A stretch of DNA of 64,000 nucleotides from NCBI RefSeq assembly GCF_046119375.1, contig NW_027362764.1:604004001-604068000 (forward strand). The letters are read 5' to 3'. Both the position numbers and the translations under genes were made by a program. Position 1 is the first letter of the stretch. Each line of letters begins with the position of its first letter. The notes under the pieces are model-generated. The model saw only the letters and a program-made list of their open reading frames with translations. It was not told where the DNA came from and searched no databases. This DNA is from Phyllobates terribilis (taxonomy: Eukaryota). Positions 13,980 through 44,740 of the stretch are shown here, one piece after another.

Positions 13980-15696
13980 AGTAACATAGTAACATAGTTT
14001 GTAAAGCCGAATAAAGACTTGCGTCCATCAAGTTCGACCTGTTAGTTCTGTAATTGCTAAATTTGATCCAGAGGAGGGCAAAAACCCCAAATGATTTGGC
14101 CAATCTTCACCTGAGGAAAAATTCCCTCCCGACTCTGAAACCAGCAGTCAGAATAAATCCCTGTATCAACCTACTATTTTATTTTATTTTTAAGTATATG
14201 CTGAAATCTGCCTGGTATCTAGAAATGCATCCAGTCCCCGCTTGAACTGGTGTAGTGAATCCGACATTACCGTCTCCTCACTCAGTGAATTCCATATTCT
14301 CACTGCTCTTACCGTAAAGAACCCCTTCCTATGCTGGTGCTGAAACCTTTTCTCTTCCAGTCTTAGTGAATGCCCTCTTGTTACCGTAATATCCCTCCTT
14401 TTGAACAAATCCCGGGCAAGATCTCTATACTGTCCCCTAACATATTTGTACACATTTATTATGTCCCCCCTCAACCTTCTCTTTTCCAGGCTGAATAGTC
14501 CTAGTTTTGCCAACCTCTCTGGGTATTGCAGTCCCTCCATTCCCTTTATTAATTTTGTTGCCCTCCTTTGCACCTTTTCAAGCTCATTTATATCCTTTCT
14601 ATATATTGGGGCCCATAACTGAGCACAGTATTCCAAGTGTGGTCTGACCAGTGCTTTGTACAGTGGAAGAACAATGTTCTCATCCTTTGCAGCTATACCT
14701 CTTCTGATACATCCCATTATCCTGTTTGCCCTTACAGCAGCGGCCTGACTTTGGGCACTCCAATTTAGTTTGCTATCAATCAAGATGCCCAAGTCCTTCT
14801 CCATCTCTGAATTCCCCAATGATTTCCCATTCAGTGAGTACTGGTGACTTCCATTTTTCCTTCCCATATGTATTACCTTACATTTCTCCTCGTTAAACCT
14901 CATTTGCCATTTAATGCTCCACCTACCCAGCTTATCCAAATCCCTCTGTAGGTCTGCACTGTCCTCTTTTGTATTAATTGTTTTACATAACTTTGTGTCA
15001 TCTGCAAATATTGATATTTTACTATTTATCCCATTGACTATGTCGTTAATAAAGATATTAAATAACATTGGGCCTAGTACAGACCCCTGTGGTACCCCAC
15101 TAGTGACGCTTACCCAATCTGAGTATATTCCATTTATAACCACCCTCTGCCTTCTATCCTTTAGCCAGTTAGCTACCCACTTGCAGACATTTTCCCCCAG
15201 CCCCATCATTCTCATTTTGTATACCAACCTATTATGTGGCACGCTATCAAACGCTTTTGAGAAGTCGAGATACACGACATCCACTGGTTCCCCCTGATCT
15301 ACTCGAGAGCTAACCTCCTCGTAGAAGTCAATCAGGTTTGTTTGACAGGAGCGATTCCTCATGAATCCATGTTGGTTTGGGGTTAATAGATTATTAGCAT
15401 CAAGATGCTCCGTAATTGCCTCTTTAATGAAGCTTTCAAAAATTTTGCCCACAACGGACGTCAGACTCACCGGCCGATAGTTTCCGGCGTCACTTTTCGC
15501 TCCCTTTTTGAATATTGGCACTACATTCGCCTGTCGCCAATCAAGTGGTACAGACCCAGTCTCAACAGAGTCCTTAAATATAAGATATAACGGTCTGTCT
15601 ATCACATTACTTAGTTCCCTTAGTACCCGTGGGTGTATGCCATCAGGTCCTGGTGATTTGTTTATTTTAATGCTACTGAGGCGTTTCTGTACCCCA
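13980..15696 (-). mobile_element. CR1 LINE, 5'-truncated
   Basis: 3' end has the octamer tail (ACTATGTT)n on the minus strand. Inserted in the Tc1 at gcactt|ggggacac with a possible ACTT duplication. Confidence 0.93.
14190..15695 (-). CDS. CR1 ORF2 reverse transcriptase region (endonuclease lost by truncation)
   Basis: Frame is open from the truncation point (KSPGPDGIHPRVLRELS) through [26 protein letters not shown] and FADD to the stop. About 500 codons with no stop. Confidence 0.9.
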   Translation of the reverse strand, partial: GVQKRLSSIKINKSPGPDGIHPRVLRELSNVIDRPLYLIFKDSVETGSVPLDWRQANVVPIFKKGAKSDAGNYRPVSLTSVVGKIFESFIKEAITEHLDANNLLTPNQHGFMRNRSCQTNLIDFYEEVSSRVDQGEPVDVVYLDFSKAFDSVPHNRLVYKMRMMGLGENVCKWVANWLKDRRQRVVINGIYSDWVSVTSGVPQGSVLGPMLFNIFINDIVNGINSKISIFADDTKLCKTINTKEDSADLQRDLDKLGRWSIKWQMRFNEEKCKVIHMGRKNGSHQYSLNGKSLGNSEMEKDLGILIDSKLNWSAQSQAAAVRANRIMGCIRRGIAAKDENIVLPLYKALVRPHLEYCAQLWAPIYRKDINELEKVQRRATKLIKGMEGLQYPERLAKLGLFSLEKRRLRGDIINVYKYVRGQYRDLARDLFKRRDITVTRGHSLRLEEKRFQHQHRKGFFTVRAVRIWNSLSEETVMSDSLHQFKRGLDAFLDTRQISAYT

Positions 15697-16203
15697 ACTT
15701 GGGGACACTTTCAAAGTTTTCCCAATTTTTCGCACTGACTGACCTTCATTTCTTAAAGTAATGATGGCCACTCGTTTTTCTTTACTTAGCTGCTTTTTTC
15801 TTGCCATAATACAAATTTTAACAGTCTATTCAGTAGGACTATCAGCTGTGTATCCACCTGACTTCGCGCAACACAACTGATGGTCCCAACCCCATTTATA
15901 AGAAATAAATCCCTCTTATTAAACCTGACAGGGCACACCTGTGAAGTGAAGACGATTTCCGGTGACTACCTCTTGAAGCTCATCAAGAGAATGCTAAGAG
16001 TGTGCAAAGCAGTCATCAAAGCAAAAGGTGGCTACTTTGAAGAACCTAGAATATAAGACATATTTTCAGTTGTTTCACACTTTTTTGTTAAGTATATAAT
16101 TCCACATGTGTTAATTCATAGTTTTGATGCCTTCAGTGTGAATGTACGATTTTCATAGTCATGAAAATACAGAAAAATCTTTAAAGGAGAAGGTGTGTCC
16201 AAA

Positions 16204-16334: not shown

Positions 16335-17517
16335 TTCAGTTCTTCAATACAAAAAGTGAAACTCATATTTGGACAATAGATCGTTATTGATGACACAAAC
16401 CATTTAAGTTATATATAGTGTATGGGGAAAAAAATCCATAAGGCTTCCTTTTCACTTCACGTGTTATTAAAATGTTTTGTGAAATATATATTTTTTTATA
16501 CATTCATTTTTTTTCTACACTTTACTGTTTTATAAAGAAGCTATTGGAAATAAGTCACCCAAAAATGCCATACCTAGAACATGGTGTGCTTAAAAAATGT
16601 GTGTATGTAACCACCCCAAAGAAGGTTTCTCAACAGAACTTCAAAGTGACCGGCAGAGTAACGTTGCCATGCTATTTTTACTGTGAATTGTGGGAGATTT
16701 ACGAAGCAGCTAATTATGCTGGAATTCTTGCATACTTTTTGGTAAAAACGATCTACTATGACCTGATCCTATGTGTTATTGACACTTTCCAGTCTTTTGA
16801 CAAGGGGTATGACATATCATGAAATCGAATCATTCAGCTTTGCTGAAAAGGGGCATGGTCTAAGCGACACTGCCATCATTGTGAGGCACTTTTCTGCTGA
16901 AAAGTAAATGGATTGAGGTTGTAACATTAGACTAGACTGTCTAAAAATGCACCAAATTGACAAGCATGAGCTATTGTGATAAATATGGCATATTTTAAGA
17001 CTGGCTACTGTAGGTTTACACTATCTAAAAATTAGACCATAGTAAATTCCCCTCGGTGAATGCAAAAAAAAACAAAACCTCTGTACAAAGATTTTTTTTC
17101 TCCATTTTTCAATATAATATACGGTAAATTTAAATGGTGCCATTAAAATAAAACTCGTCCTCCAATAAACAAACCGTTCCTTAGCTATATCAAAAGAAAA
17201 AAGAATGTCATGGCCAAAGAGGCATGTTCACACATAGTGAATACATTGGTTTTTTTTTAATCTGGATGGAAAATCTGCAAACAGAGGACATTGACCTACA
17301 AAACAAATTTACACTTTTTGCAAATAAATTGTGAAGTAGGCCAGCTGATGCTCAGCAAAATCTGCAGTGCAAAATTTGTAAGTGTGAACATTCTTTTGGA
17401 GTCTTTTTCTCAAAAACCCCATATGGGCATTATGAGTTAAATGACGGTTTCCTGGTTAGCAATTTCCATCAATTAGCTGAATAAGAAAGTTGCTATCAAG
17501 AGTGTTTCTCACTCTGA

Positions 17518-17867
17518 GGCTGGGTGCCCAAGATGCGTTTTTCAAGTGGAATCTCCGTAGCGGAAACGCTTTTAAAACACTTGGTAATCCATGCCCCACA
17601 GTCCCCAATGAAAATCCGCATGTTCTGTGCACATGCTGTGGATTTTCTGTGCGGAAAAATTCGCAGCATGTCCATTATTTGTGCATTTCCGCAAGCTGAT
17701 TTGACTACTCAATGCATTTGAAAAACACATGGCAAATCCGCATGTAAAAACGCAGCAAAAAATGCTTAAAAAACGCGTGTAAAATCCGCAAGCGTTTTTA
17801 CTGCCAAGGACATGCAGAAACACTGCGGAAATTTTCTGCTTCAATTCTGCATTGTGGGCACATAGCC
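17518..17867. mobile_element. Harbinger-like MITE (GGCTATGTGCCCAC family)
   Basis: TGA|GGCTGGGTGCCCA ... TGGGCACATAGCC|TTA. Confidence 0.7.
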
Positions 17868-18565
17868 TTAAGGAATCAACCATATTGGAAGCAGATGACC
17901 AATTTATTTCAGGGGGCACAATGTGTTGCTTAGTTTTTCTTGCGGTGATGCTGTAGAGGATGAACACTTGTTGCTTAGTTTCCACCATAGCTTACAGCTG
18001 CCCGCTCGAGGGTCTAGCAGTGAAACAAACTTTGTTCATCTTAAAACTCTGATCAGCTCCTAGGTTAATTTCACCCACTGTGGGTTGTTGTTTTTTTTTA
18101 CGCTATGTAAACTGACCTGTTCGGGCTCACAAAAATGCACCACAGGTGAATTTCTCTTCTGGGTATGCTGAGTTTTATGTGAAGATTTTCCACATAGAAT
18201 TGCATTAAATTACGGTAAGTAAAACCTGCCATTGATTCCAGGGTATTGTCCCGTTTACTCTTCTTTTTTTGTAGTTTTATAATTGAAAATTATATAACCT
18301 TTCAATAAAAATTGAATTTGAAAAAAAAATGTGTAAAACCTGACATACCAAAAGTAGACAAAAACACAATAAAACACATGTAAAAAATGCATTAAAAATA
18401 CAATGGAAAAAAAAAAACCTACAAGTAACTTAATATACCAAATAGGTGCAATAAAAACTCACTAAATATTCACAATGTAGCCTTAGCGAGACCTTCAATA
18501 TTGTGAAGAAGGAACTACATGAGCTCTGATGCCTATATACATTCATGGCCAAAAGTTCCAGAAAA

Positions 18566-18767
18566 TGAAATTGTTCCAGAAAATCAAGTTTTTCTCCCAG
18601 AAAATGATTGCAATTGCACATGTTTTGTTATACACAACAATACTCACCTTGAGATGTTGTGCCAGGTGAGCACAACTCCACTAATCGTTAAAACACCATG
18701 CAGCCTAGGTCTTGCATCCACGTCTGAGCTTGCCAATCTTTTTGGGGGTTTTGTGTGAAATTATGTC

Positions 18768-18799
<32 letters not shown>

Positions 18800-19005
18800 G
18801 TGTAGTTTCAATGCACACAAAGGAAATTAACATAGTTGGCAGCTCAGCCATGGATGCAAGACATAGGCTGCATCGTGTTTTAACGATTAGTGGAGTTGTG
18901 CTCACCTGGCACAACATCTCAAGGTGAGTATTGTTGTGTATAACAAAACATGTGCAATTGCAATCATTTTCTGGGAGAAAAACTTGATTTTCTGGAACAA
19001 TTTCA
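18566..19005. repeat. ~170-bp inverted repeat (arms 18566-18736 and 18836-19005) with a poly-T spacer
   Basis: The same peptide (EIVPENQVFLPENDCNC...TTPLIVKT) appears in ORFs on both strands, so the arms are close to identical over ~130 bp. Confidence 0.95.
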
Positions 19006-20039
19006 ATGAATGAATTTATTTCTGTGTTCAAAACATTGTGGCCCCACGTGAGATGGGTGAATCGATACACAGGACCCCGGATCAGCCCTGTGAATCGCCT
19101 CCTACCCGGAGGCATCCACGACTTCTCTTGTGATTACCTGGGCAGGCATGACATTGTGTGTCCATCAAGGCTCACTGATTTCACTCCAGCCCAGCTAATC
19201 AAAAGAGGAGCCACTAATGCCTTCAGGTAGGATGCGATTCACACAATTTACAGGGCTCCATCCAATTGTCATGAAATACTGACCGGGCTGCTGGACTGTG
19301 ACCCGGTGAATAAATCTCTCATCTCTACTTTCCAACAATTATATTCTTTTACTGCTAAGGACTAGTGTTGAGCGAGCACTAAAATGCTCGGGTGCTCGAA
19401 GCTCGGGCCGAGCTCGCCGTGATACTCGGGTGCTCGACCCGAGCAACGAGCCCAATGTTGGTCTATGGGAGACTCGAGCATTTTTGCGGTGGCACCCCCG
19501 GCAGTCTTTTAAAAGCCTAACAAGTGCCCAAAACGATAGTGACAGTGCTCAAATGACATGGGGACAGCATGGGGATCGCCCCAGGAAGCATTTCTGACCC
19601 CCAGGTCACTGCTGTCAACAACGTGGTCAGAGGTATTAAGCCACTTTTACAGGCTCACAATAAAACGTTCAAAAACGAAAGTGAAACTTTTTTCCTGTGA
19701 AATATGTTAAGGAACATCCTTTCCAGGGTAAAGACTTGTGTATAAGTTAAAATAAATGGCCAAAAACAAAAATACTCCTCCACACCTTCGGCTATGTTCA
19801 CAAGTAGCATTTTTATGCGTTTTTGCACTTTTGTATTGCTTTCAACTATGACAAATGCATTCACCGTGAAATGTCATTTTAACATTTTACAACCTTATCT
19901 GGCCATGTGCTGTGTGACACATGCATAAAGTGCTGAAAAGACAAGGGAACAGCATGGGGAAGACCCCTGGAAGCATCTCTGACTCCCAGGTCACTGTCTA
20001 AAAGTGTGCCCATCATAAGTGATCCTTACCGCATCAGAA

Positions 20040-21520
20040 GATGCAGACTTGCAACTATCCCCATGCAAGTTCTAGTCCCAGGGCAGTGTTCAATTGTACC
20101 TCCCCCATTCCTTGCAATACAAGCTCAAGTATGCAGCCTGCCACCCACCCACCCCCAGGCTGCAATACCATACTGCTTGCTTGCTTGAACTTGAAATTGG
20201 GCCTTTTAGGCATGTGGAGGCGGAATCTGGCCACCACGTCATGGCTGTGTTGGCGGCCTGGAATCCATACTCAGTCCCCAGCCGCCCGGCGGCCGGGTGT
20301 CCATACTCTGTCCCCAGCCGCCCCGCGGCCGGGTGTCCACACACGGTCCCCAGCCGCCTGGGGGCAGCCGGGTGTCCATAAACGGTCCCCAGCCGCCCCT
20401 ATTTCTCCTTGGAACATCCCCCCACACACTTTTATTAGCCCGGCCTGCTTTGGGCACCATTGTACGAGCCCACCAGAGAACCAGACTCCTCCGGTGGGCC
20501 CTGACTTCTCCATTGGTGGAGTTGAGAGTGCCAAGGTGAGGAGCATGATGATGATGACAGAAGTTAGCATCTGCTATGTTTTCTTTTAATGCAAGTGTAA
20601 GTGTGCAGCCTGCCACCCACCCACCCCCAGACTGCAATTCCATACTGCTAGCTTGCACTTGAAATGGGGCCTTTTAGTTTGGAGGAGGCCGAAGCTGGCC
20701 ACTACCTCATGGCTGCTTCGGCAGCGAGGTATCCGTACTCAGTCCCCAGCCGGCCATATTTGTCCTGGTGTGCCTTATACATAAGATTAAGCGCGTATAC
20801 CAAAACATTACCTGTGCCCTCCCCAGTGCATTTAGTGGGAAGGAGAGCCTATTCCACTGTAGTGTGTGCATGCCAAACCCCTGTTCATGGTACATGCGAA
20901 GATGCCTCCCACCTTGCACCTGTCGTTGCAGACTTGCAACTATCCCCATTCAAGTCCTTGTCCCAGGGCAGTGTTCAATTGTACCTCTCCCATTCCTTGC
21001 AGTGCAAGCGCAAGTATGCAGCCTGCCACCCACCCACCCCCAGGCTGCAATACCATACTGCTTGCTTGCTTGCACTTTAAATTGGGCCTTTTAGGCATGT
21101 GGAGGCGGAATCTGGCCACCACGCCATGGCTGTGTCGGCGGCCTGGTATCCATACTCAGTCCCCAGCCGCCTGGTGGCCGGGTGTCCCCGCTTGCTCCCC
21201 AGCCTCCAGGGGGTGGCCGGGTGTGCATACTCGGTCCCCAGCCACCCCTATTTGTCCCGGTAACCTTTCCCACACTTTTCTTAGCCTGGCCTGCTTTAGG
21301 GCAGCATTGGCCGACCCCACCGGACTATCAGACTCCTCTGGTGGGCCCTGGCTTCTCCATCAGGGGAGTTGAGAGTGCCAAGGTGAGGAGCATGATGAGG
21401 ATGATAGAAGTTAGCATCTGCTTTGTTTTGTTGTAATGCAAGCGCATGTATGTAGTAGCGGCTAGGCCTGAGGTGGTCAGCGTTTTGGCGCATATCCTAC
21501 CTCCTCCGAGGATTGCTGGA
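20040..21520 (+). repeat. Internal 885-bp-period duplication made of degenerate transposase-domain copies on the strand opposite the transposase
   Basis: cagacttgcaactatcccc occurs at 20044 and 20929. Translations such as SVQLYLSHSLQCKRKYAA...LLAL..PFRHVEAES...MAV...YSVPSR match transposase SVQLSISQTFERKRKFAA...LLALEMLPFRLVETES...MAV...YSVPSR. Confidence 0.85.
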
Positions 21521-21921
21521 TGTTTTCCTGCTACTATCCAAGTTCTATGACTCCCGTTAAAACAAAGCTTCAGGTGATAAATGATGGATGAGGTAGTGGC
21601 AAAGGAGAAAGAGCAGGAGGAACAGGGACCATTCACATCAATATCAGGCCAGTCAACCAGATATGACTTGTAGGATATGTTTCTGTAACAAAAGGAGCGG
21701 TTCGGCTGCACAGTTATAGGGCATACAGTGAGTGCAATGCCTACCAAAAATTTCGAGCCACTCCAATGCCCCTTGGAAATGACATGGAGGTCAGAGGGCG
21801 TTAACTAAACCTTTTTTTCCATTTATAGCAACTGGGTCTCCCGTGCACTGTTGGCCTAAGCAGTGAATGGAAGGCTTTCCAAAAATTATGAGGAACTGCA
21901 ATGCCCCTTACAAGAGCCATG

Positions 21922-22936
21922 TGTGGCACCCCAGGGGTCTGGTCACCACAGTAATAGAGATATTACGTCGGAGAGCAAGTGGGAGGTTTCCTGGTCAGGA
22001 TCCCTTAAACATGCAACATCCTCCTGCCCCAATCCTGGGAGGGGAGAATTCTGCCCTTATAAACTGGATCTGGGGCGGGGTTGAATGAGTCAGAGAACAG
22101 TCAGAGTCAGAGTGAGAGCAAGGGAAAGTAACAGCAAGGAGCTCTGTAGGAGCTAAAGACCAGGGGCTGGAAGCTGAGCAGAGCTCGCCCTGGCAGAAGA
22201 CAATAGGAACCGGACACAGGAGTCCGAAGCTGTGAGGACTTATATATCCAGCAACAGAAACCAGCCGGCAGGGGATTTCAGGTCCTCTGGCCATAGAAGC
22301 CCGGAGGCTCAGTCACAAGCAAGGGACCAGCACAGCCGTCGTGGAGCGGAGGCTAGCAGAAGGCCCCAAGTCACCAGCCATACGGGTGAGCACTACACGG
22401 TACACTCAGGGACGTGGGCTACTTCTACCCGCTTACAGCAAGGTAGCCAGGAAGAGTGCAGACAGACGGGGAGGCCTACAACTCCACCTGGCCAGGGGAA
22501 CTCCTGCTTGCTCACAGACTGACCAGGTCTCTTATGCTAGCCAGTACTCCCGGGAGGGTCTGCCTTATAATCATCAGTAAAGACCCTGAACTGCACTGCA
22601 AAGACTCTGAGTCATTCCTGCTGTGCTCGTGCACCATCACCCCCATCATCCACACTCACTGCCCTGAGGCTATACTCCTCCCGAGTCAAGTTATCCCATT
22701 CTATGCTGCGCACACAACACCAGCCTCAGCGGTCTGCCTCGCAGCGGTGGTACTCCCGGTCCGCAATCCACGGGTGGCGCAGTCGGACAATTAACCTCAA
22801 ACCCTAAGAAAGACTGCCACTGGTTTGACCAGCCTGAGCCACGGGACCGGGTCACCGCCACGGAGACTACAGACGCCAGAGACCCGGCACCGGGTATCCC
22901 ACACACGTGTACACACGGCCCAGGGGGCGCGTCACA
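21922..22936 (+). mobile_element. Solo LTR nested in the hAT
   Basis: TGTGGCACCCC...GGGCGCGTCACA termini, CATG on both flanks (the right copy overlaps the terminal CA) and TATAAA at 22058. Confidence 0.8.
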
Positions 22937-23320
22937 TGCAGTACAGCATATTACAAACATAAGTCCCATTATTGGGGAGTGGGTGTCCCATAGTATTTGC
23001 TTATGCTTTCCCAGCAAAAGCTGCCAAAAATTAGGATGGAGCAACTTGCAATGCCCCTTACAAGAGCCATGCAGTACAGCATATTACAAACATAAGTCCC
23101 ATTATTGGGGAGTGGGTGTCCCATAGTATTTGCTTATGCTTTCCCAGCAAAAGCTGCCAAAAATTAGGACGGAGCAACTTGCAATGCCCCTTACAAGAGC
23201 CATGCAGTACAGCATATTACAAACATAAGTCCCATTATTGGGGAGTGGGTGTCCCATAGTATTTGCTTATGCCTTGCAAGCAAAAGCTGCCAAAAATAAG
23301 GACGGAGGAACTTGCAATGC
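22937..23320. repeat. 133-bp tandem repeat, ~3 copies (hAT 3' region)
   Basis: Units start at 22937, 23070 and 23203. The tail of a preceding unit lies left of the LTR (21880-21921). Confidence 0.95.
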
Positions 23321-23479
23321 TGGCACCCTGGTGGTATAGTGGTGGTGGAGGCTGAGGATAAGGAGAAGAAGATTAAACAGCCGAAACGAGGAAGCGTATA
23401 CCCATGTGTGGGTGTGAAGCGGTGCATGTGAATACACCTCCCGAAATAACACAGTGGATTTGACTTTGTTACTCTGCTG

Positions 23480-26400
23480 TCATTTGGTGGTGATGAGAAG
23501 TCTGGCCCAATCCAGCCCTTGTTCATTTTGATAAGGGTCAGCTTGTCAGCATTGTCAGTTGACAGGCGAGTGCGCTTATCAGTTATAATTCCCCCAGCGG
23601 CACTAAAAACACGCTCCGATAACACGCTAGCGGCAGGGCAGGCCAGGCCAGGCCAGGACCTCCAAGGCGTACAGAGCGAGTTCATTCCAAGTGTCCAGCT
23701 TGGATACCCAATAATTAAAAGGCACAGAGGAATCACGGAGGACGCTGGTACGATTGGCAAGGTACTCCCTCACCATCTTTTGAAACTTTCCACTCCTTGT
23801 GAGAGTACCCCGCGCCTCAGGGCCTGTAAGCTGGGCGGGTGTCAGAAAACTGTACCAGAACGTTGACAGTGTTCCCCTGCCTCTGCTGGATTGGAGTTGC
23901 ATCTCTCTCGCCTGTACGCCTTGGTTGGGCAACGAACTGTGACCTCTGCCGCTAGCGTGTTCAGATGGGAATTTTTTTAAGAGTTCTGCAGCAAGGGCCT
24001 TCTGGTACAGCCCCATTTTTGTAGACCTCTCCACCTCAGGAATAAGAGAGTGAAAGTTCTCCTTGTAGCGGGGGTCTACAAGTGTCACCAACCAGTAATG
24101 ACTGTCACCCAACATTTTGACAACGCGAGGGTCACGGTTAAGGCAGCGTAACATAAAGTCAGCCATGCGTGCCAGACTGGTAACGGGCAAGATTTCCGTG
24201 TCCTCACCAAGATGACGACTGACCATGCTCTCCTCCTCCTCCTCCCCCCTGTCCTCAGGCCACCCACGCTGAACCGACGGTATGACACTTGTACAGGCAC
24301 TACCGTCTACAACGCATGATAGCAGCTCCTGTTCTTCCTCCTCCTCTCCCTCATTGTCCCCCAATGCACGTTGGGATGAGATGAGGCTGGGCTGTGTGTT
24401 ATCGCCCGCTATTTCTTCTTGATCCATCTCATCATACTCTGGCTGCAATGCCTCCTCTTTAATTCTCTGGAGAGAGCGTTGCAAAAGACAGACAAGTGGG
24501 ATGCTGACACTAATGATGGCGTCATCGCCACTCACCATCTTGGTGGCCTCCTCAAAGTTGGTCAGGATGGTACATATGTCAGACATCCAGGTCCACTCCT
24601 GAGGTCTTGTGTGGAGTCTGACCTGAAAATCGACGGCCTTGTTGCAGCTGGTACTCCACAACTGCTCTCTTCTGCTCACAAATCCTTTGCAACATGTGGA
24701 GGGTAGAGTTCAAACGTGTGGGGACATCACACACCAGTCGGTGTGCCGGAAGCTGCAAACGCTGCTGCAACACAGCAAGGGCGGCGGAAGCTGTAGCCGA
24801 CTTGCGAAAATGAGCTGACAGGTGGCGTACTTTCACGAGCAGATCTGGCAACTCGGGGTACGATTTAAGAAACCGCTGAACCACGAGGTTAAGCACATGA
24901 GCCAGGCATGGTACGTGTGTGATCTCACCTCGCCTCAGAGCCGCCACCAGGTTACGGCCATTGTCACACACGACCATGCCGGGATGTAGGTTCAGCGGTC
25001 TCAGCTACAGATCTGCCTGCTCTTTCACAGCTGTCCACAACTCACAAGCAGTGTGAGGTTTATCACCTAAGCTTATGAGTTTCAGCACAGCCTGTTGCCG
25101 CTTGGCGGAGGCAGTACTGCAATGCTTCCAGCTTGTAACTGATGTGGTGATATCTGAGATGGAGGCTGAACATGAGGAGGAGGAGGAGGATGAGCAGGAG
25201 CTGTACACTGTGGGGGCAACTCTGACTGACATAGGGCCCGCAATCCTCGGTGTGGGGAGGATGTGTTCCGTCCCAAGGTCCGACTGGGTCCCGGCTTCCA
25301 CTATGTTTACCCAGTGTGCCGTCAGAGATATGTACCATCACTGGCCACAAGCACTTGTCCACGTGTCCGTTGTCAGGTGGACTCTCCCAGTAACTGCGTT
25401 GTTGAGGGCACGGCAGATGCTTTGGGACACGTGCTTGTGTAGTGCGGGGATGGCACACCGGGCAAAATAGTGTCGGCTGGGGACCGAGTACCGAGGGACG
25501 GCCACCGCCATAAGATTGCGGAAGGATTCCGTCTCCACCAGCCTAAAAGGCAGCATTTCCAATGCAAGCAGTCGTGAAATGTGCGAATTTAGGACTGTGG
25601 CCTGTGGGGCGTTAGCTGCGAATTTCCGCTTTCGTTCAAAGGTCTGGGATATGGACAATTGAACGCTGCGGTGGGACGTGGACGTTGATGCTGTTTCTTG
25701 AGAAACTGCCACAACAAGTGAAGACTGAGAGGAGGGGGCATATTTACATGCAGTATGGACAGGGGATTGCCTTGCACACACAACAGGGGGTTCTGTTGCA
25801 CGCACAACAGTGGAAGAAGCGATGGTGACACCCGCTGACACTGGTCGTGGACCTTGGGTTTCGCCCCACAAAGTCGGGTGCTTTGCTGCCATGTGCCTGA
25901 TCATGCTGGTGGTGGTCAGGCTGGTAGTTTTGTCACCCCTGCTGATGCTGGCATGGCAGGTGGAACATATGGCCTTTTTGGGGTTATCAGCAGAGTCTTT
26001 AAAAAAATTCCAGACTCTGGAAGACCTACCGCTTGTACTGGCAACGTCCCTCGTGTTGGTGTTACGGGGAACGGTTGCCTGCCTTCTGTCTGCGGCCACC
26101 ACACTGCTTCTTCCTGCCTGTTGAGGTACCACCACCTCCTCCTCTTCCACTTGCGCACCACGATCCTCCTCCTCACTTCCTGGCAATTGTGTCTCGTCAT
26201 CGTCCACCTCTTGTGACAGATTGCCAACGTCGACTTCCTGTGGCCGTGGCTATTCAAATATTTGGGAATCGCAACATGGGATCTCCTCTTCCACCACTTC
26301 AAGCGTATCAGGCGAGGGGCCCAAATATGGAAATGGACCAGTGAACAGCTCTTCAGAGTGTCCAAGTGTGGGATCACTTGCTGTCTGACGACACTCTGCA

Positions 26401-26729
26401 TGGTGGGAGGAAGGAGCATCAGGGTGAGGAGGAGTATGCGGTCGAGACTCACGGCTACTAAGAGTTGACCGTGTGGAAGACAGACCGGAGGTGGTGGTGC
26501 CCAGGTAACTGGAAGTATTATCTGCTATCCAATTAATAACCTGTTCACACTGATCAGCTCTCAATACTGGTGTTGTTCTGTGCTTCCCTAGTAATTCGGT
26601 CAAGAAGTGGGAGCGAGAAGATGTGGCTGTTGGTTGTGGCACATTTTCACCTTGGCCACGGCCCCGTCCTCTGCATTTACCATCACCAGAACGTCCACTT
26701 CCACGTCCCTTGCCACGCGCCTTGCCCAT
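23480..26729 (-). pseudogene. hAT transposase, frameshifted
   Basis: Five consecutive ORF fragments carry: RG-rich N-terminus, BED finger (VWNFF...AICSTC...HMAAKH), TTDTWTS, CDNGRN, CLAH, TRLNST (W->L), LVDPRYK and C-terminal CPAASVLSERVFS. A (GGCCA)3 slippage near 23640 breaks the frame. Confidence 0.93.
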
Positions 26730-26797
26730 TGTAAATGAAGTAAAATAGCTTACACTTGCACTATCAATGGAAAAAGGGTAATAAAGAGTAGATTAGA

Positions 26798-27620
26798 ACC
26801 GTGGAAGAGGAAAACCACAGTTATTGTTTACTGGGGTATACCACACTTTTTTAAATAGAGATATTTGCGGCTGAACAGTGAGCGACACACTCAAACTGCT
26901 TTTTTTTTTAGATACCAAAGGCCCAAAACTGGATAGTACAGCAATTTAACCCGTGGAACTGCGAAACCACACTGGGATGTGGGGCCTACACAAGACTATT
27001 TTCAGCAGATATATTTTTGTGTCACAACAGTCAGGAGACACTACTGTTTTTCTTTACGGAAAAAACTACCAAAAGCTGAATAATAGAGATTTTTTACCGT
27101 GGGATGGCAAAACCACAGTTATTGTTTACTGGGGTATACCACACTTTTTTAAATGGAGATATTTGCGGCTGAAAAGTGAGCGACACACTCAAACTGCTTT
27201 TTTTTTAGATACCAAAGGCCCAAAACTGGATAGTACAGCGATTTGACCCGTGGAACTGCGAAACCACACTGGGATGTCGGGCCTACACAAGACTATTTTC
27301 AACAGATATATTTTTGTGTCACAACAGTCAGGAGACACTACTGTTTTTCTTTACGGAAAAAACTACCAAAAGCTGAATAATAGAGATTTTTTACCGTGGG
27401 GTGGCAAAACCACAGTTATTGTTTACTGGGGTATACCACACTTTTTTAAATAGAGATATTTGCGGCTGAACAGTGAGCGACACACTCAAACTGTTTTTTT
27501 TTTAGATACAAATGGCCCAAAATGGATAATACAGAGGTTTGAACCGTGGAAGTGCAAAACAACACTTCTGTTTCTTTAGCCTACACCAGACTATTTTCAA
27601 CAGTTATATTTGTGTCTGAA
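26798..27620. repeat. ~297-bp tandem repeat, ~2.7 copies, upstream of the transposase ATG
   Basis: aaaaccacagttattgtttactgggg occurs at 26811, 27109 and 27406. Confidence 0.95.
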
Positions 27621-28013
27621 AAATCAGAGACACGCTTTTTTTTTTTTGGGGGGGGGGGGGGGGGACACCAAAAGGTTAATAAGACGGGTATTTGTACAGT
27701 GTGAAGGAGGAAAAAAAAAGGAGGATTTAGATGGAAAAAAAAGGATTTTTCCTGGCCCCCGACACCTGGTGCTAAGTCCAGCAATTTCAGCAACAGGAGC
27801 ACACAGGACTGTAATGCAGCGTTTGCTGGTATAACCACTGTGTCTCCTATAGTGCCTGCCTGCCTGGTATCTGGGATGGATATTAGTCCTGAGAAGGACT
27901 GTTTGTTTGTTCTGGCAGCCTTTACAGACCTTACACTAACTATTTCGCAGTTTATATCTCTCCCTAAATCAGCAGAGCTGTCCCTACACTGTCTAATCCG
28001 GAGCGACTGTGTC

Positions 28014-28141
28014 CAAGATGGCGGCGCCCCGTTTTAAATACTCGAGGTGACGCTGTGCGGCCAGCCAATCACTGTAATGCCCACAACCAACATGGCTGCA
28101 GCATTACAGTGACTGTCTGGCAATCCCTGCATGTTCATTGG
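28014..28141 (-). promoter_or_regulatory. Putative hAT transposase promoter
   Basis: In minus-strand order: CCAAT (28137-28141), inverted CCAAT (28065-28069), TATTTAAA (28033-28040), then a YY1-type GCCGCCATCTTG (28014-28025). Confidence 0.45.
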
Positions 28142-29224
28142 CTCTGTAAAGAGCGCCAAACATGCAGGGCGGAGACCCGAGCTCCCGCCCGAGTAACCCG
28201 GAAATGCTCGGTGCTCGCCGAACATCCTGAGTAGCGTGATGCTCGGGCGAGTACCGACCAGTGTCGAGCATGTTCACTCAACACTACTAAGGACTGCCTA
28301 GTTGAACAATAACAAAAAAAAAAGCTTTACTCGCCTGGCGTTGCACCAGTCCTTTTTGACAGCTTCCTCTAAGAACGCTACAATTACATCGCATGTGAAT
28401 GCTGCAGCCAATCACTGGGCTCAATAATGATGCCAAGGTATTTGACATGAGACCGCTGGGCAGTGATTGGCGGCAGCAGTCACAAAAGCTGTAGTCGTTA
28501 TTTCCTTATTGCAGCCTGTCAGTAAAGACTGAGGGCAGCTTCGGTGAGCCGACCCTGGAGCTGAGGTGGGTAAGTAGAGCTATTTTTGTTATATTGACCC
28601 TGAGCCTTTTCAGTAAATAAATAATTGATGGATTAAAGAATAGTGATAAAACCGACCTGGCGCCAGGTGATTAAAAACTTCTTTATTAAAATCTCTGTAC
28701 ACAACTCAAGCCCCTTTTTCAAGTGGCATAGATAATGTCTCTATATGCATAATACCTACGCAACGGGTGAATAACTCACATGTTATCCCATTCATGGGGA
28801 AAGAGGGGATTTTACCACATCATAATGTATATAAGCCTATAAGAACAATGGTGCACCCCAAAAATGCAACTCAGTGCTAGAGAATGAATTAAAAAATATA
28901 TATTTTATTTAAGTATATTTAAAAACCAAAATCACTACAAAAATATAAAAGCGAGATCAATGGGTATGAGGTGAGATATACATGAAAGAAAGATCACAGG
29001 GGGGCATAGAGGCTCTATAGGCAATGCATAAGGGTCCTTTGTGCTAATAGATGCCAAAAAGGCAGTATTCATAGTTTAAGCCACAAACATGCATAGACTC
29101 ATGGGACAGTGCCAGTGCCATGCGCACAATTGAAATAACGACCTAATGAACAATATACATATGTATGTGCGCTCGCCGCTTAACATGAGTCAGGCTTACC
29201 CATATGTATCCCGCTGTGATCGTG

Positions 29225-29263
29225 CCCCGATGTGCGTTTCGCGTGGTGGGCTTCCTCGGGGGG
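29225..29263 (-). ncRNA. Minimal type I hammerhead ribozyme-like motif (degenerate)
   Basis: Minus strand reads CCCC-CCGAGGA-AGCCCACCACGC-GAAAC-GCAC-AUC-GGGG: stem I CCCC/GGGG, core CUGANGA with U4->C, GAAA, and an NUH triplet AUC. Confidence 0.65.
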
Positions 29264-29999
29264 CGGTGTGGTGTGTATGATATCTCTTGTCCATTTATAT
29301 CCCCATCCTCAATCAAGATGCTTGTGACAGCCGTTGGTAACGGCACACGTGCAGCGAAGTCCCGGCATCCACATATCACTTCCGGCCATCGCGATAACGG
29401 TGCGGGTCAGTAAAGTGTTTCCTGTGACTTCATTTCCCGCGTCGCATCATATGGATGCCTTCGTTGGTGGTGGTACTGCAGGGACCCACTGCGCGTGCGC
29501 ACATCCAGGTGGCCATTTTCCTTTTGGGCAAAAGTGAAGGGCAAAACTCACCACTATCTCGTCTTAAACCATTATCTTATTAGTGGGTTGTGGAGAGTAT
29601 TGGGACCAGGGAACCAAGAGAGGAGCATAGAGAAACGACAGACGGGACAGTCACAATCCGTATGGGAACAAGTAAATCTCATTGAAGGGGACATCACTCA
29701 AATACAATATGCGTCGGCATATGTGGTCCCAAGGAAGATATCCTATATTTCTTCTGTGTTCCCAAATCTAGGACTGTGTTTATCTCCATATACGCTCCAT
29801 TTCTCACAGGATCCCATAATGGCTTATAGGGTTGAGGGTCACGTCCATCAATAAGTAGGGAGTATAAATAGAAACATCAAAGATAATCTTGTGTCCAACT
29901 ATGGAATGTGAAAAAAATATAATAAAAGTCAGTTAAAAGAACAACATTCAAATTTAAAACCAATTGGAGAGAGTCAAAAACCCAGATTAGCTAGATAAT

Positions 30000-30594
30000 C
30001 TATTATAGAAAAGGTGAAAATGATAGTTTTTCATTTAACCCAGAGGGGGACATGGTGTCCAGAGCGAAAATCCAACGGCATTCCCTTTGAGCTAAGATTT
30101 TTCTTTCTGTCACCTCCCCTGATACCACATAATATTCTGTCGATTCCAATAAATTTAATTTCATCAGTATTGCACTTATGGTGTAACCTAAAGTGTCTTG
30201 GGATGGTTTTTAATACAGAGACATCCTCAGCCGTGCTCGCGGCTTTGATGTCTCTGATATGCTCCCTCACTCTTATGCCCAGCTCTCGGGATGTGAGTCC
30301 CACATAATGGAGGTTACAAGTACAAGTAGCACGATAAATAACGTAACTCGTACTACGGGAGATGTAATGAGTGATCCGGTAGTCCCTTCCCCCCTCAGAG
30401 GATGAAAAACTAGTAGCTCTAGTGATGTTTCTGCATGCCAGGCAAGATCCGCATGGAAAACAGCCCCATCTCTGTACACCAGCACCGAACGGGTTCGGAG
30501 GATTTGCCACATAGTGGCTCCTTACCAAGATGTCTCTCAAATTCCGACTTTTTCTTGCAGTAAGTAATGGATGGTCAGGAAGGATTCTCCTCAA
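30000..30594 (-). pseudogene. GIY-YIG endonuclease of a Penelope-like element (RT missing)
   Basis: ARKSRNLRDILVRS, a CFPCGSCLAC zinc motif, YVIYRATCTCNLHYVGLTSRELGIRVREH, and FIGID. Frameshift just before the final RWIFALDT-type motif. Confidence 0.88.
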
Positions 30595-40850: not shown

Positions 40851-41040
40851 TTAAGTGCTACTGGCCTTGAAAGACACTATGAAATATTCACTCAGCGCAT
40901 GCGTTTATTGGTGACTTGGTACACAATAAACTACTGTCTGTGCTCAAGATAAGGAATGTACACACCTTCATGACTTATGGGGAAGCTAACATCAGAAAAT
41001 GACCTATTGTTTAAATCAAGTTTTTGTGTTGCATATACTT

Positions 41041-44000
41041 TAATAATAATAATAATTTTTATTTTTATAGCGCCAGCATATTCCACAGCACTTTACAAAT
41101 TTTAGGGGGGACTTATACAGACAATACAGAATAAGCATATCTCATATCGAAAGGAGTGAGGGCCCTGCTTGCAAGCTTACAGTCTATGAGAAATGGGGGA
41201 GACACAAAAGGTAGAATGTACATATATTGTATAATGCAGCCTTGATATACTAAATAGGATAAATAATACATGGACTGGTCGCCTGCCAGTATGTGTGCAG
41301 TCCTGACCGAGGCTATTAAGTGCATGGTTGGTATGAACCTGAAATTGAAGAAGATTTTAATATGGGGGAAAACTGGGACAGACAGATAGTGTGTGGAGGT
41401 GATACGCCAGTCTAAAGAAATGGGTTTTTAGGGTCAGCTTGAAACTGTGGGTATTGGGAATTAATCTAACTGTCCTGGGTAGTGCATTCCAAAGAATTGG
41501 CGCAGCACGCAAGAAATCTTGGAGATGGGAGTGGGAAGTTCGGATTATGGAGGATTTTAGTTTTAAGTCATTGGCAGAACGGACGGCACGTGTAGGGTGG
41601 TAGACTAAGACAAGGGAGGAGATGTAGGGGGGTACTGAAGCATGGAGCGCTTTGTGGGTAAGCGTGATAAGTTTAAATTGAACTCTATATTGGATGGGCA
41701 ACCAATGCAATAACTGGCACAGGGAAGAGGCATCGGTGTAGTGGTTGGCGAGGAATATGATCCTGGCTGCTGCGTTAAGGACGAATTGGAGAGGGGAGAG
41801 TTTAGTAAGAGGGAGCCCGATAAGTAGAGAGTTGCAGTAGTCCAGATAAGAATGAATAAGAGCTACAGTAAGAGTTTTTGCTGAGTCAAAGGTGAGAAAT
41901 GTCCTGATTCTTGAGATGTTTTTGAGGTGTAGATGACATGAACGAGCGAGTGATTTGATGTGAAGAGTGAAGGAAAGATCTGAATCAAAAATGACCCCAA
42001 GACAGCGGGCTTGTTGCTGGGGAGTAATGGTTGAGCTACAAACGGAAATGGCAATATCGGGCACAGGTAGGTTAGTGGAGGGAGGAAATACGAGTAGTTC
42101 AGTTTTTGACAGATTCAGTTTTAGACAGAGGGAGGACATAGTGTTAGACACAACAGAAAGACAATCACTGGTCTTTTGTAGTAATGCGGGGGTGATGTCC
42201 GGAGCAGAGGTGTATAATTGGGTGTCATCAGCATAGAGATGGTACTGAAAACCGAATCTGCTGATTGTTTTTCCAATGGGAGCGGTGTATAAGGAGAAAA
42301 GAAGGGGGCCTAGGACTGATCCTTGAGGAACCTCGACAGTAAGGGGAAGGAGAGAGGAGGAGGAGCCGGCGAAAGACACAGAGAAGGAGCGGTCAGAGAG
42401 ATAGGAGGAGAACCAGTAGAGAACAGTGTCCTTGAGGCCAATAGTGCGGAGCATAGTGAGGAGGAGCTGGAGATCCACAGTGTCGAATGCTGCAGAGAGA
42501 TCCAGGAGAATCAGCAGGGAGTAGTGACCATTAGATTTAGCTGTTAGTAGATCATTAGAGACTTTAGTGAGGGCAGTTTCAGTAGAATGTAAAGAGCGGA
42601 AACCAGATTGTAAAGGGTCAAGAAGAGAGTTGTCTGAGAGATAGCGGATTAGACGGAATGGACCAGGCGTTCCAGAAGTTTAGAGATAAAGGGAAGATTG
42701 GAAACAGGTCTGTAGTTGGCCGTGCAGTTCTGGTCAAGGGATGTTTTTTTTAAGTAATGGATGTATGCTGGCATGTTTAAAAGAAGAGGGAAAGATACCA
42801 GATGAGAGGGAGAGGTTGAAAATTTTAGTTAGGTGAGTGGTGACAGCTGGAACAAGGGACTGAAGGAGATGTGAGTGAATAGGGTCACTGGTGCAAGTGG
42901 TAGGGCGAGAAGATGCAAGGAGCCCGATCACTTCATCTTCCGTGACTGGTTCGAAGTCAGAAAGTGAGCAAGATACAATGTGGCGGGGGAGAGTATGCAT
43001 AACGTTTGGGGATAGGGAGAAAATTTCCCGTCGGATATGGTCAATTTTTTCTTTGAAATAATTGGCCAGATCGTCAGCACTGAGGTCTGTGATCAGGGCC
43101 TGTGCTGCTTGATTGAGGAGAGAATGAAACGTGTCAAAGAGTCGTTTAGGATTATTGGAAAGTGAGATGATGAGGTTGTTAAAGTAGGTTTGTTTGGAGA
43201 GGTGAAGCGCAGAGTTATATGTTTTCAGCATAAAGTTATAATGGAGGAAATCTTCGGGCAGATTAGATTTTCTCCACAGCCTTTCAGCGCACCTGGAGCA
43301 CCGCTGGAGAAGACGTGTTTGAGGCGTGTGCCAGGGTTGTCGCAATCTATGCCAAAATTGTTCTTTGTGTAGGAGGTGCGGCTTCATCCAGGGCGCATAG
43401 CATTATTTCGTTATAATGCTTCAATGCAGAGTCGGGACATGAGAGGGAGGAGTTTGGGGCAAATGATTGCAACTTTTTCAGACATTTCTGAGTGTTAATG
43501 GCGCATATTTTCTATAAGTGTGGAAAGTGGGAGTGTCTTGAGTAGCCTCACAGTTCTTGACAAAGAATGAAAGAAGATTATGGTCATAGAGTGGAAGGGG
43601 AGAGTTAGTAAAGTCATGTACTGAGCAAAGCCGGGAGAAGATCAGGACCAATGTGTTCCCGTCTTCATGTGTAGGAGAATTAGCAAGCTGTGAAAGGCCG
43701 AAGGAGGAGGTTAGTGATAAAAGATGAGCGGCAGATGGGGAAAGAGAAACGCCAATTGGGATGTTAAAATCTCCCATGATTATCGTGGGGATGTCGCAGG
43801 ATAGAAAATTTGGAAGCCAAGCAGCAAAGTGATCCAGGAACTGACGGGAGGGACTTGGAGGGCGATAGACAACCGCCACTCGCAGGGAGAAGGGCCGGTA
43901 GAGTCTGACTGTGCGGGCCTCAAAAGAAGGGAAGATAAGGGAGGGTACTGGGGGGATAACCTGAAAAGTACATTTTGTTGAAAGAAGCAGACCAACACCT

Positions 44001-44600
44001 CCACCTGATCTGTTGTCAGGTCTCGGAGTATGAGAGAAGTGTAGGCCACCATAGGAGAGAGCTGCAGCGGCGGTGGTGTCTGACTGCTGGATCCAGGTTT
44101 CAGTGAGAGCCAGAAGGTTGAGGGAATTAGAGAGGAAAAAGTCATGGATGTAAGAGAGTTTATTACATGCTGAGCGCGCATTCCAAAGGGCACAGTTGAA
44201 TGAGACCGAAGATATGCAGGGAATATTAATGAGATTAGCTGGGTTTCTGAATGTAACAGGGAAAGAATTAGTGTTATTATTTCTGGAGGGTCCTGGATTA
44301 GGAGAAATATCACCTCCGACTAAGAGAAGGAAGATACAGAAAGTGAGCAGATAGTTGAGTGATTTGTGAGAGCCTTTCCAGTGTTGTATGGTGGGAATGA
44401 ATGGATCTGTGTGGTATAACATTGTGAAGAGAGCATGACAGCTGTACATAGGAGAAGAGAGGAGAGAGGGTTTAGTATGGACGAAGTGTGCCGAATTTGT
44501 GGGAGAACGGTGAATGTGGATGATTGTAGCAGCCAGAACGTAAATGGCACAAATACAAATGGTGAATACTGTTTGCAAAACAGATGACCTGGAAGCAAGT
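41041..44600 (-). mobile_element. L2-clade LINE with nearly complete but disrupted ORF2
   Basis: APE motifs (WNARS, LTETW, YRPP, MGDFN, DHNL) in 43478-44611 and RT motifs ([15 protein letters not shown]) in 41357-42478. 3' end gcgctata...(TTA)n. Frameshifts and stops between the ORF pieces. Confidence 0.93.
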
Positions 44601-44740
44601 TTGTACTGCACTGTGCAGAAGTTTTAGGCAGGCATAGAAAAATGCTGCAAAGTAAGAATACTTTAAAAAACAGAAATTTTTAGTTTATTTTTTTAATCAA
44701 CTAACAAAATTCAAAATGAACAAACGAAATACTGATTTAA

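What the first reader, a model, noticed from the sequence alone, without database searches (positions are those of the whole stretch)
20040..21520. hAT carries an antisense array of its own transposase domain: possible second gene or built-in silencer
On the strand opposite the transposase are four degenerate copies (~20070, ~20560, ~20955, ~21405; organised as an 885-bp duplication) of the segment between the BED finger and the first catalytic Asp (source ~25430-25700). By hand, copy 3 matches at about 33 of 64 aa (SVQL...KRKYAA...LLAL..PFR.VE.ES...MAV...YSVPSR). After YSVPSR a 36-bp unit repeats in frame (PYSVPSRPAAGC, x3-4). No catalytic motifs are included. Two hypotheses: (a) an ancestral convergent ORF encoding a catalytically dead multi-domain DNA-binding or dimerising regulator, by analogy with the accessory proteins of Harbinger and Kolobok; (b) an inverted self-homology that makes dsRNA/piRNA for self-limitation. 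I do not recall this layout being described for hATs.
Basis: partly seen in the sequence, partly recalled or inferred. Interest (0 to 1): 0.7.

Follow-up and report, generated by a model that had tools for sequence, protein, structure and literature searches.

The report
Decayed inverted transposase scraps inside hAT
A very abundant frog "cut-and-paste" (hAT) jumping gene carries, behind its enzyme gene and in the opposite direction, several worn-down copies of one piece of that gene; they are real and shared by the whole family, but they look like mutating passenger DNA, not a second gene.

Summary
Window 20003-21545 (+) holds four degenerate copies of the transposase segment between the BED finger and the first catalytic Asp. 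The best copy has 51 of 106 residues identical (E 7e-16) and 66-71% DNA identity. The copies form an 885-bp duplication with an in-frame 36-bp minisatellite.

I found the element's ends: TIR TAGTGTTGAG and 8-bp TSD CTAAGGAC, at 19363 and 28286. The array therefore lies inside one 8.9-kb hAT, downstream of the transposase stop.

The array is not private to this locus. Contigs from runs of three organisms cover all of 19363-25362 with very many near-identical pieces. Related hATs of Pristimantis and Engystomops have the same 3' end but no array.

The "second gene" reading is not supported:
- the homologous frame has 20 stops;
- changes on the array lineage are spread evenly over codon positions (23/25/29) and are twice as many as on the transposase lineage;
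- copies 1 and 3 differ by 11 nonsynonymous and 1 synonymous codons;
- no predicted protein resembles the array except true transposases.

The "silencer" reading is untested and unlikely today: the longest exact match to the source is 16 nt.

Best reading: an old inverted self-fragment, later amplified in tandem, that spread with the family. The scan had not noted this on other DNA.

The parts
19363..28286 (-). Complete hAT element of 8,924 bp with the transposase on the minus strand. The 8-bp target-site duplication CTAAGGAC lies at 19355-19362 and 28287-28294.
   Evidence: A TIR/TSD search gave a single hit: TAGTGTTGAGCG against TAGTGTTGAGTG, 11 of 12, read. 19363-19485 is homologous to the 3' ends of the related elements in L003 and L002.
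23191..26729 (-). Transposase gene, broken into six reading-frame pieces in this copy. It has a BED finger (aa 63-111 of ORF 25338-26207), a DTW motif near 25365 and a C-terminal hAT dimerisation domain.
   Evidence: ORFs. Pfam zf-BED E 7.5e-10 and Dimer_Tnp_hAT E 2.6e-6. Relatives P0001-P0009.
25385..25792 (-). Source segment of the array: transposase aa about 134-274, between the BED finger and the first catalytic Asp.
   Evidence: blastn and tblastn.
20003..20285 (+). Array copy 1. The core, 20076-20285, matches aa 178-245. The upstream part carries a deletion and an in-frame TAG.
20252..20398 (+). 36-bp minisatellite grown from the YSVPSR motif of copy 1: 4 copies, the last with a stop.
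   Evidence: TRF; translation.
20410..20579 (.). Spacer of unknown origin inside the 885-bp unit. Its partner is 21262-21404.
   Evidence: No match to the transposase or to the other loci.
20580..20840 (+). Array copy 2, lacking its start. It matches transposase 25640-25385 (aa about 190-274) and has a 4-nt deletion that shifts the frame.
20835..21170 (+). Array copy 3, the fullest. It matches aa 134/142-245 and has an in-frame TAA at 21078-21080.
21140..21243 (+). Second minisatellite block: period 39, 2.8 copies.
21405..21545 (+). Array copy 4: a short start (CKRMY) joined to a piece that matches transposase 25265-25218.
   Evidence: Inverted pair I14.

Best explanation
The array is non-coding passenger DNA of the transposon.

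Proposed history:
- In a progenitor of this poison-frog hAT family, a piece of about 420-570 bp of a transposase gene was copied in inverted orientation. The piece came from the element itself or from a close sister subfamily.
- It landed in the non-coding stretch between the transposase stop and the 3' subterminal region. The most likely route is template switching during repair of an excision gap, which is how such elements pick up filler DNA.
- The piece was then amplified in tandem: first head to tail, then as an 885-bp higher-order unit, with a 36-bp minisatellite growing out of the YSVPSR motif.
- It decayed without coding constraint and was carried along when the family multiplied to very high copy number in at least three species.

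Shown here: its position inside the element, its homology and orientation, its presence across the family, its absence from related frog hATs, and its neutral-looking substitution pattern.

Inferred: the mechanism of origin and the lack of function.
For: Inside the element: TIR and TSD at 19363 and 28286. No nested hAT-type TIR/TSD pair lies in 19400-23300.

Family-wide:
- Four runs from three organisms cover all 30 bins of 19363-25362 with contigs at least 90% alike: 248,274 pieces in X1, 3,727 in X10 and 1,989 in X11.
- Depth over the array is of the same order as over the transposase.
- Only 1.5% of the pieces in X1 lie on the stretch in part only, and little of what was laid runs on into unlike sequence (0-0.07 in X10, X11 and X13), so the layout is collinear in most copies.
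- A minority of contigs skip 849-861 bp, that is, one unit.

Lineage-specific: the Pristimantis element (L003) and the Engystomops elements (L001, L002) have the transposase. L003 and L002 also show the homologous 3' end. None has a minus-strand transposase hit. In L003 the distance from the end of the gene to the end of the element is 0.8 kb, against 3.8 kb here.

No coding constraint:
- With L003 as outgroup, the array lineage has 77 changes, spread 23/25/29 over codon positions (uniform, p 0.70).
- The element's own transposase lineage has 38. The two transposase lineages together give 33/18/40 (p 0.017).
- Copies 1 and 3 differ at 12 sites, giving 11 nonsynonymous and 1 synonymous codons.
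- The homologous frame has 20 stops, the most of the three + strand frames.
- The longest open stretch, 188 codons in another frame, is reached by 6.4% of shuffles.
- The two 885-bp units differ in length by 38 nt, and the long ORF of unit I is split in unit II.

No protein relatives apart from true transposases at 45-51% identity.

The same element has other tandem amplifications, 133 bp x 2.9 and 297 bp x 2.7, so tandem growth of its non-coding parts is usual.
Against: - The array is old. It is about 34% diverged from the source, while family copies are 90-99% alike. The active lineage therefore kept 1.5 kb of apparently useless DNA for a long time, which could hint at a DNA- or RNA-level role.
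- I could not read other full copies, because the poison-frog assemblies were too large for the tool. I do not know whether the stops and frameshifts seen here are in the family consensus.
- The codon-position contrast between the array and the transposase lineages is not significant by itself (p 0.17).
- At protein level the array matches a Ranitomeya and a Pristimantis transposase slightly better than the element's own (84 and 82 against 70 bits). So "own gene" against "sister subfamily" as the source is unresolved.
Confidence: 0.7

Rival explanations
1. Built-in antisense or hairpin regulator. A transposase transcript that reads on into the 3' region would contain the array as antisense to its own codons 134-274. 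It would fold back into a long imperfect duplex that feeds small-RNA or ADAR pathways, or that blocks translation or export, and so limits the element. This may have worked mainly when the copy was young and nearly identical.
For: - The array is inverted and lies downstream of the stop, inside the element.
- Predicted duplex energy of copy 3 with the source is -375 kcal/mol, against -236 +/- 11.5 for shuffles.
- The array is retained across the family in three organisms.
- There are precedents in which an inverted partial duplication of a transposase gene silences the family: Mu killer in maize (PMC3440606), and inverted Ac duplications made by alternative transposition (bioRxiv 10.1101/2020.01.07.897926).
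Against: - The longest exact match to the source is 16 nt, and the longest uninterrupted helix is 17-18 bp with G-U pairs allowed.
- The array diverged about twice as fast as the source, with no sign that complementarity was maintained.
- The family reached very high copy number despite carrying the array.
- No listed holder of the stretch is on record as RNA.
- Related frog hATs do without it.
Confidence: 0.15
2. Second gene. The array is, or was, a convergent + strand ORF that encodes tandem copies of the transposase's N-terminal dimerisation and DNA-binding segment. The product would act as a catalytically dead regulator, a dominant-negative partner of the transposase. This copy would simply be a broken example.
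For: - The repeats cover only the non-catalytic segment between the BED finger and the first Asp.
- ORFs of 95 and 138 aa lie in the homologous frame, the latter with an ATG.
- The 36-bp repeat is a multiple of three.
- The array is retained across the family.
Against: - Every copy is broken here: a stop in copies 1 and 3, a 4-nt deletion in copy 2 and a truncated copy 4.
- The homologous frame has 20 stops.
- Changes are spread evenly over codon positions, and copies 1 and 3 differ by 11 nonsynonymous and 1 synonymous codons.
- The frame is not kept between the two units.
- The array is absent from related elements.
- There is no array-like predicted protein in 5.8 billion clusters or 1.84 billion representatives, although poison-frog proteins are in those sets: P0001 from Phyllobates and P0010 from Ranitomeya.
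Confidence: 0.05
3. Remnant of a separate hAT copy that inserted in the opposite orientation into the 3' region of this element and was then largely deleted. On this reading it is a nested insertion, not a self-duplication.
For: - At protein level the array matches transposases of other frogs slightly better than the element's own.
- Its divergence from the host gene is large (34%).
- Unchecked notes of this scan report double and nested hAT insertions in this genome.
Against: - There is no second TIR motif (TAGTGTT or AACACTA) anywhere inside the element, and no TIR plus 8-bp TSD pair in 19400-23300.
- At DNA level the array is closest to the host element's own gene, including the poorly conserved linker upstream of SVQL (61-66% against 50-62%).
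- 19363-19485 is a genuine 3' end, so the element is not a tail-to-tail composite.
- In any case this differs from the best explanation only in how the fragment arrived.
Confidence: 0.1

Closest known systems
Filler DNA, or captured and rearranged internal sequence, in cut-and-paste transposons (Ds derivatives of Ac, Pack-type elements, internally rearranged hAT and P elements)
   Same: A foreign or self-derived fragment sits between intact ends. It shows no sign of function and is copied along with the element. Tandem growth of non-coding parts is seen in the same element.
   Different: The cargo here is an inverted piece of a transposase gene of the element's own clade. It was amplified into a higher-order tandem array and is present in what looks like the standard, transposase-bearing form of a very abundant family. 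That such capture arises by gap repair is my own knowledge, not tested here.
Mu killer of maize (PMC3440606), and inverted Ac duplications made by alternative transposition (bioRxiv 10.1101/2020.01.07.897926)
   Same: A partial inverted duplication of a transposase gene. The Ac case is also a hAT.
   Different: Those are single chromosomal loci with near-perfect arms. They make hairpin RNA and siRNAs and silence the family. Here the inverted piece is inside every mobile copy, is only about 66% identical to its source (longest exact match 16 nt), and the family multiplied greatly. No small-RNA evidence is available.
Truncated-transposase repressors and accessory proteins (P-element KP-type repressors, the Harbinger Myb-like protein)
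   Same: The repeated segment is the non-catalytic N-terminal part, which could in principle bind DNA or the transposase.
   Different: There is no intact ORF, no purifying selection, no conservation in related elements and no protein relatives. The comparison with KP and Harbinger rests on my own knowledge.

Membership tests
hAT superfamily transposon (the host element) | 8-bp target-site duplication | tested here: met
   CTAAGGAC at 19355-19362 and 28287-28294. It fits nTnnnnAn.
hAT superfamily transposon (the host element) | Short terminal inverted repeats that begin YARNG | tested here: met
   TAGTGTTGAGCG against TAGTGTTGAGTG, 11 of 12, with subterminal GCTCGG/CCGAGC motifs.
hAT superfamily transposon (the host element) | Transposase with a BED finger and the C-terminal hAT dimerisation domain | tested here: met
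   Pfam PF02892, E 7.5e-10, and PF05699, E 2.6e-6. The gene is frame-broken in this copy.
Transposon-encoded accessory or repressor protein gene | Intact open reading frame kept among copies | tested here: not met
   There are 20 stops in the homologous frame. All four repeats are broken. The two 885-bp units do not keep one frame. The longest open stretch is no longer than in 6.4% of shuffles. Only this copy could be read in full.
Transposon-encoded accessory or repressor protein gene | Purifying selection on the protein | tested here: not met
   Changes on the array lineage fall 23/25/29 over codon positions and are twice as many as on the transposase lineage. Copies 1 and 3 differ by 11 nonsynonymous and 1 synonymous codons.
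Transposon-encoded accessory or repressor protein gene | Presence in related elements, or as a predicted protein elsewhere | tested here: not met
   Absent from L001-L003. The only protein hits are true transposases at 45-51% identity.
Hairpin-type transposon silencer (Mu killer-like) | Inverted duplication of transposase sequence | tested here: met
Hairpin-type transposon silencer (Mu killer-like) | Long near-perfect double-stranded RNA that can yield small RNAs matching the target | tested here: not met
   DNA identity is 66-71%. The longest exact match is 16 nt and the longest helix 17-18 bp.
Hairpin-type transposon silencer (Mu killer-like) | Transcription across both arms, and small RNAs derived from them | not testable with these tools
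   No holder of the stretch is on record as RNA. X13 is only guessed to be RNA, and contigs cannot show strand or level.

The most novel reading that the evidence does not exclude
The inverted array is a self-limiting device carried by the transposon itself. When it arose it was near-identical to the gene, and read-through transcripts of every copy folded into a hairpin that fed the host's small-RNA machinery. The element was thereby tamed enough to be tolerated at enormous copy number. What we see now would be the decayed relic, or a still partly active, mismatch-tolerant piRNA or ADAR substrate.
Probability: 0.1. Interest if true: 0.7.

Novelty: new variant of a known kind. Interest (0 to 1): 0.3.

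Why it matters
If the array is only passenger DNA, it matters little. It is one more example of how the abundant hATs of poison-frog genomes pick up and amplify sequence, and it shows that a fragment of a transposase gene can itself become cargo. It is also a warning for annotation, because these copies will be called as antisense hAT fragments or spurious ORFs.

It would matter more if the array gives rise to antisense or small RNAs. hATs make up hundreds of megabases of these genomes (PMC6278860, PMC11152451). A self-carried inverted copy in every element would then be a natural test of whether transposons can carry their own brake. Ordinary stranded RNA and small-RNA sequencing of frog gonads would test this directly.

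Tried and rejected
- DNA of other poison-frog copies: the Phyllobates terribilis (P0001) and Ranitomeya imitator (P0010) loci were found, but their files are too large for the tool. I therefore made no family consensus and no between-copy dN/dS. I built no consensus and repaired no frame.
- Word searches with the 138-aa ORF in the homologous frame and the 182-aa ORF in another frame: no hits.
- Exhaustive HMMER search with the 138-aa ORF: only three proteins, all carrying true hAT transposase sequence; the best one, P0010, is a chimeric prediction.
- Exact-pattern scan of metagenome contigs with a 24-mer of the array: nothing.
- Pfam on array ORFs and on ORFs of 21328-23044: nothing credible.
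- Rfam on 17000-30000: nothing.
- Search for nested hAT ends inside the 3' region: none.
- Other copies in the window: none.
- A bacterial promoter and terminator scan was pointless for this genome.
- Earlier findings by sequence: blank.
- Rejected idea: a tail-to-tail composite of two elements. 19363-19485 is homologous to the genuine 3' ends of related elements.

Full report
**1. What is there**

The + strand of 20003-21545 holds four degenerate copies of one part of the hAT transposase gene. That gene lies on the minus strand at 23191-26729.

Querying with the N-terminal ORF (25338-26207, 289 aa, BED finger at aa 63-111), tblastn finds three hits, all in one frame:
- 20859-21170 to aa 142-245: 51 of 106 identical, E 7e-16, one in-frame stop;
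- 20076-20285 to aa 178-245: 33 of 70 identical, E 2e-10;
- 20652-20777 to aa 214-253: 23 of 42 identical, E 1e-6.

The same pairs are visible as DNA at 66-71% identity (inverted pairs I3-I11).

A fourth, short copy begins near 21405. It ends with 21491-21544, which matches transposase 25265-25218.

The copies are arranged as a higher-order duplication of 885 bp (20042-20608 against 20927-21455 at 83%). Each unit contains:
- a fuller copy;
- a 36-39-bp minisatellite grown from the YSVPSR motif;
- a spacer of about 160 bp of unknown origin;
- a copy that lacks its start.

Copy 2 ends at source position 25385, and copy 3 starts next to it at about source position 25792. The first step was therefore a head-to-tail duplication of a unit of about 420 bp.

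**2. The array is inside the transposon**

A search for an 8-bp target duplication next to inverted ends gave one solution. The element runs from 19363 to 28286. Its ends are TAGTGTTGAGCG and TAGTGTTGAGTG, and CTAAGGAC flanks both sides. With one mismatch in 12, I estimate the chance expectation at about 0.001.

19363-19485 is homologous to the end of the related elements in Pristimantis (L003 13042-13165) and Engystomops (L002 15052-15164), downstream of their transposase genes. It is therefore a true 3' end.

The array lies in the 3.8 kb between the transposase stop (about 23191) and that end. No second copy of the end motif, and no TIR plus TSD pair, lies inside 19400-23300.

**3. It is not private to this locus**

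Twenty public runs from five studies hold the 1.8-kb stretch or a part of it, among them small runs of three organisms.

I laid four runs on 19363-25362 at 90% likeness or more:
- All 30 bins are covered in all four runs, by 248,274, 3,727, 1,989 and 542 contig pieces.
- Single contigs in the small runs have word depths of hundreds to thousands.
- The array bins are of the same order as the transposase bins.
- Only 1.5% of the pieces in X1 lie on the stretch in part only, and little of what was laid runs on into unlike sequence (0-0.07 in X10, X11 and X13). The order of parts seen here is therefore the usual one.
- At several array positions (20735, 20753, 20856, 21002, 21315) nearly all contigs of all runs share a letter that this copy lacks. 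This is what one expects of a family consensus with private changes in this copy.
- A minority of contigs skip 849-861 bp (for example 20409 to 21271, 15 contigs). These are copies with one unit instead of two.

These are contigs, so they give neither a copy number nor a strand.

By its closest protein relatives the genome is a poison frog or a close kin: Phyllobates terribilis at 94% identity and Ranitomeya imitator.

**4. It is absent from relatives**

The related elements of Engystomops (L001, L002) and Pristimantis (L003) have the transposase. Their N-terminal ORFs are 54-57% identical to this one, and their DNA is 72-82% identical over the aligned stretches. L003 and L002 also show the homologous 3' end. 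None of the three has a transposase hit on the opposite strand.

In L003 the gene end and the element end are 0.8 kb apart. About 3 kb, including the array, was therefore gained in the lineage that leads to the poison-frog family.

**5. Where it came from**

At DNA level the copies are closest to the host gene (61-66%), then to Pristimantis (57-62%), then to Engystomops and Dendropsophus (50-58%). This includes the poorly conserved linker upstream of SVQL.

At protein level a Ranitomeya and a Pristimantis transposase score slightly better than the host gene (84 and 82 against 70 bits).

The source is therefore a transposase of this clade. I cannot decide between the host gene and a sister subfamily.

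**6. No sign of a coding constraint**

- With Pristimantis as outgroup, 77 changes fall on the array lineage and 38 on the host transposase lineage.
- The array changes are spread 23/25/29 over codon positions (uniform, p 0.70).
- The two transposase lineages together give 33/18/40, with the expected deficit at second positions (p 0.017). The direct contrast of the two distributions is not significant (p 0.17).
- Copies 1 and 3 differ at 12 sites, giving 11 nonsynonymous and 1 synonymous codons.
- Over 20003-21545 the homologous frame has 20 stops, more than either other + strand frame.
- The longest open stretch, 188 codons in another frame, is reached by 6.4% of dinucleotide shuffles.
- Copy 2 has a 4-nt deletion.
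- The two units differ in length by 38 nt, and the 182-aa ORF of unit I is split into two frames in unit II.
- Neither array ORF has a relative by word search.
- An exhaustive HMMER search of 1.84 billion representatives found three proteins, all carrying true hAT transposase sequence at 45-51% identity; the best one, P0010, is a chimeric prediction.

Caveat: only this one copy could be read in full, because the poison-frog assemblies were too large for the tool.

**7. Could it act as RNA?**

A transposase transcript that reads on into the 3' region would carry the array as antisense to its own codons 134-274.

The predicted duplex of copy 3 with the source is far more stable than for shuffles (-375 against -236 +/- 11.5 kcal/mol). 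Even so, the longest helix is 17-18 bp and the longest exact match is 16 nt.

No run on record as RNA holds the stretch, so this remains untested.

Known precedents are single loci with near-perfect arms: Mu killer (PMC3440606) and inverted Ac duplications (bioRxiv 10.1101/2020.01.07.897926). Here the family multiplied greatly while carrying the array, and the array drifted away from its source at twice the rate of the gene.

**8. Verdict**

The evidence fits an old inverted self-fragment that was amplified in tandem and carried along as decaying passenger DNA (confidence 0.7). A present-day protein-coding role is very unlikely. An RNA-level role is possible but unsupported.

hATs are a large part of poison-frog genomes (255 Mb in Oophaga pumilio, PMC6278860; 3.9% of the Dendrobates tinctorius assembly, PMC11152451). 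Neither paper mentions this layout.

Unchecked notes of this scan describe other hAT copies of this genome with captured gene scraps and tandem arrays. That fits a family prone to picking up filler DNA, but it is not independent evidence.

Noticed in passing
window 22935-23333: A 133-bp tandem repeat (2.9 copies, 97% matches) duplicates the last 42 residues of the transposase, the end of the hAT dimerisation region, in direct orientation just past the stop. Reads show that copies of the family vary in repeat number (joints 23325 to 23060 and 23325 to 23193).
   Followed up: partly
window 26792-27633: A tandem array with periods of about 150 and 297 bp (2.7 copies of 297 bp, 93%) lies in front of the transposase gene. 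Earlier notes of this scan describe 149-bp repeats at the same place in other copies of a poison-frog hAT family.
   Followed up: partly
window 24607: Some contigs of all four runs carry two more letters here (TG or TA) than this copy. This is where the frame breaks between ORFs 24579-24977 and 23627-24679, so this break seems not to be shared by all copies.
   Followed up: no
window 19690-19922, flanked by 19544-19611 and 19929-19996: Many contigs have loose ends at 19690 and 19922, and depth is higher between them. This suggests a separate high-copy repeat of about 230 bp inside the 3' region. It is bracketed by a 68-nt direct repeat that is 85% alike.
   Followed up: no
window 18566-19005: A 165-nt inverted repeat, 98% complementary with a 110-nt loop, lies just outside the hAT. 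It looks like a foldback or MITE-like element and includes a T29 run.
   Followed up: no
window 41000-45000, 14000-16000 and 62000-63000: Strong strand asymmetry of composition: GC skew +0.35 to +0.45 at 41-44 kb, -0.19 to -0.30 at 14-16 kb, and AT skew +0.52 at 62-63 kb. These are probably other repeats or satellites.
   Followed up: no
P0010 (Ranitomeya imitator CAJ0967291.1): A predicted protein of 1021 aa joins a reverse-transcriptase domain to a BED finger and the N-terminal hAT segment. It is most likely a chimeric gene model across two transposons.
   Followed up: partly
L002 3144-5773 and 9848-13036: The Engystomops locus holds two or three copies or fragments of the related hAT within 10 kb, all on one strand.
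   Followed up: no
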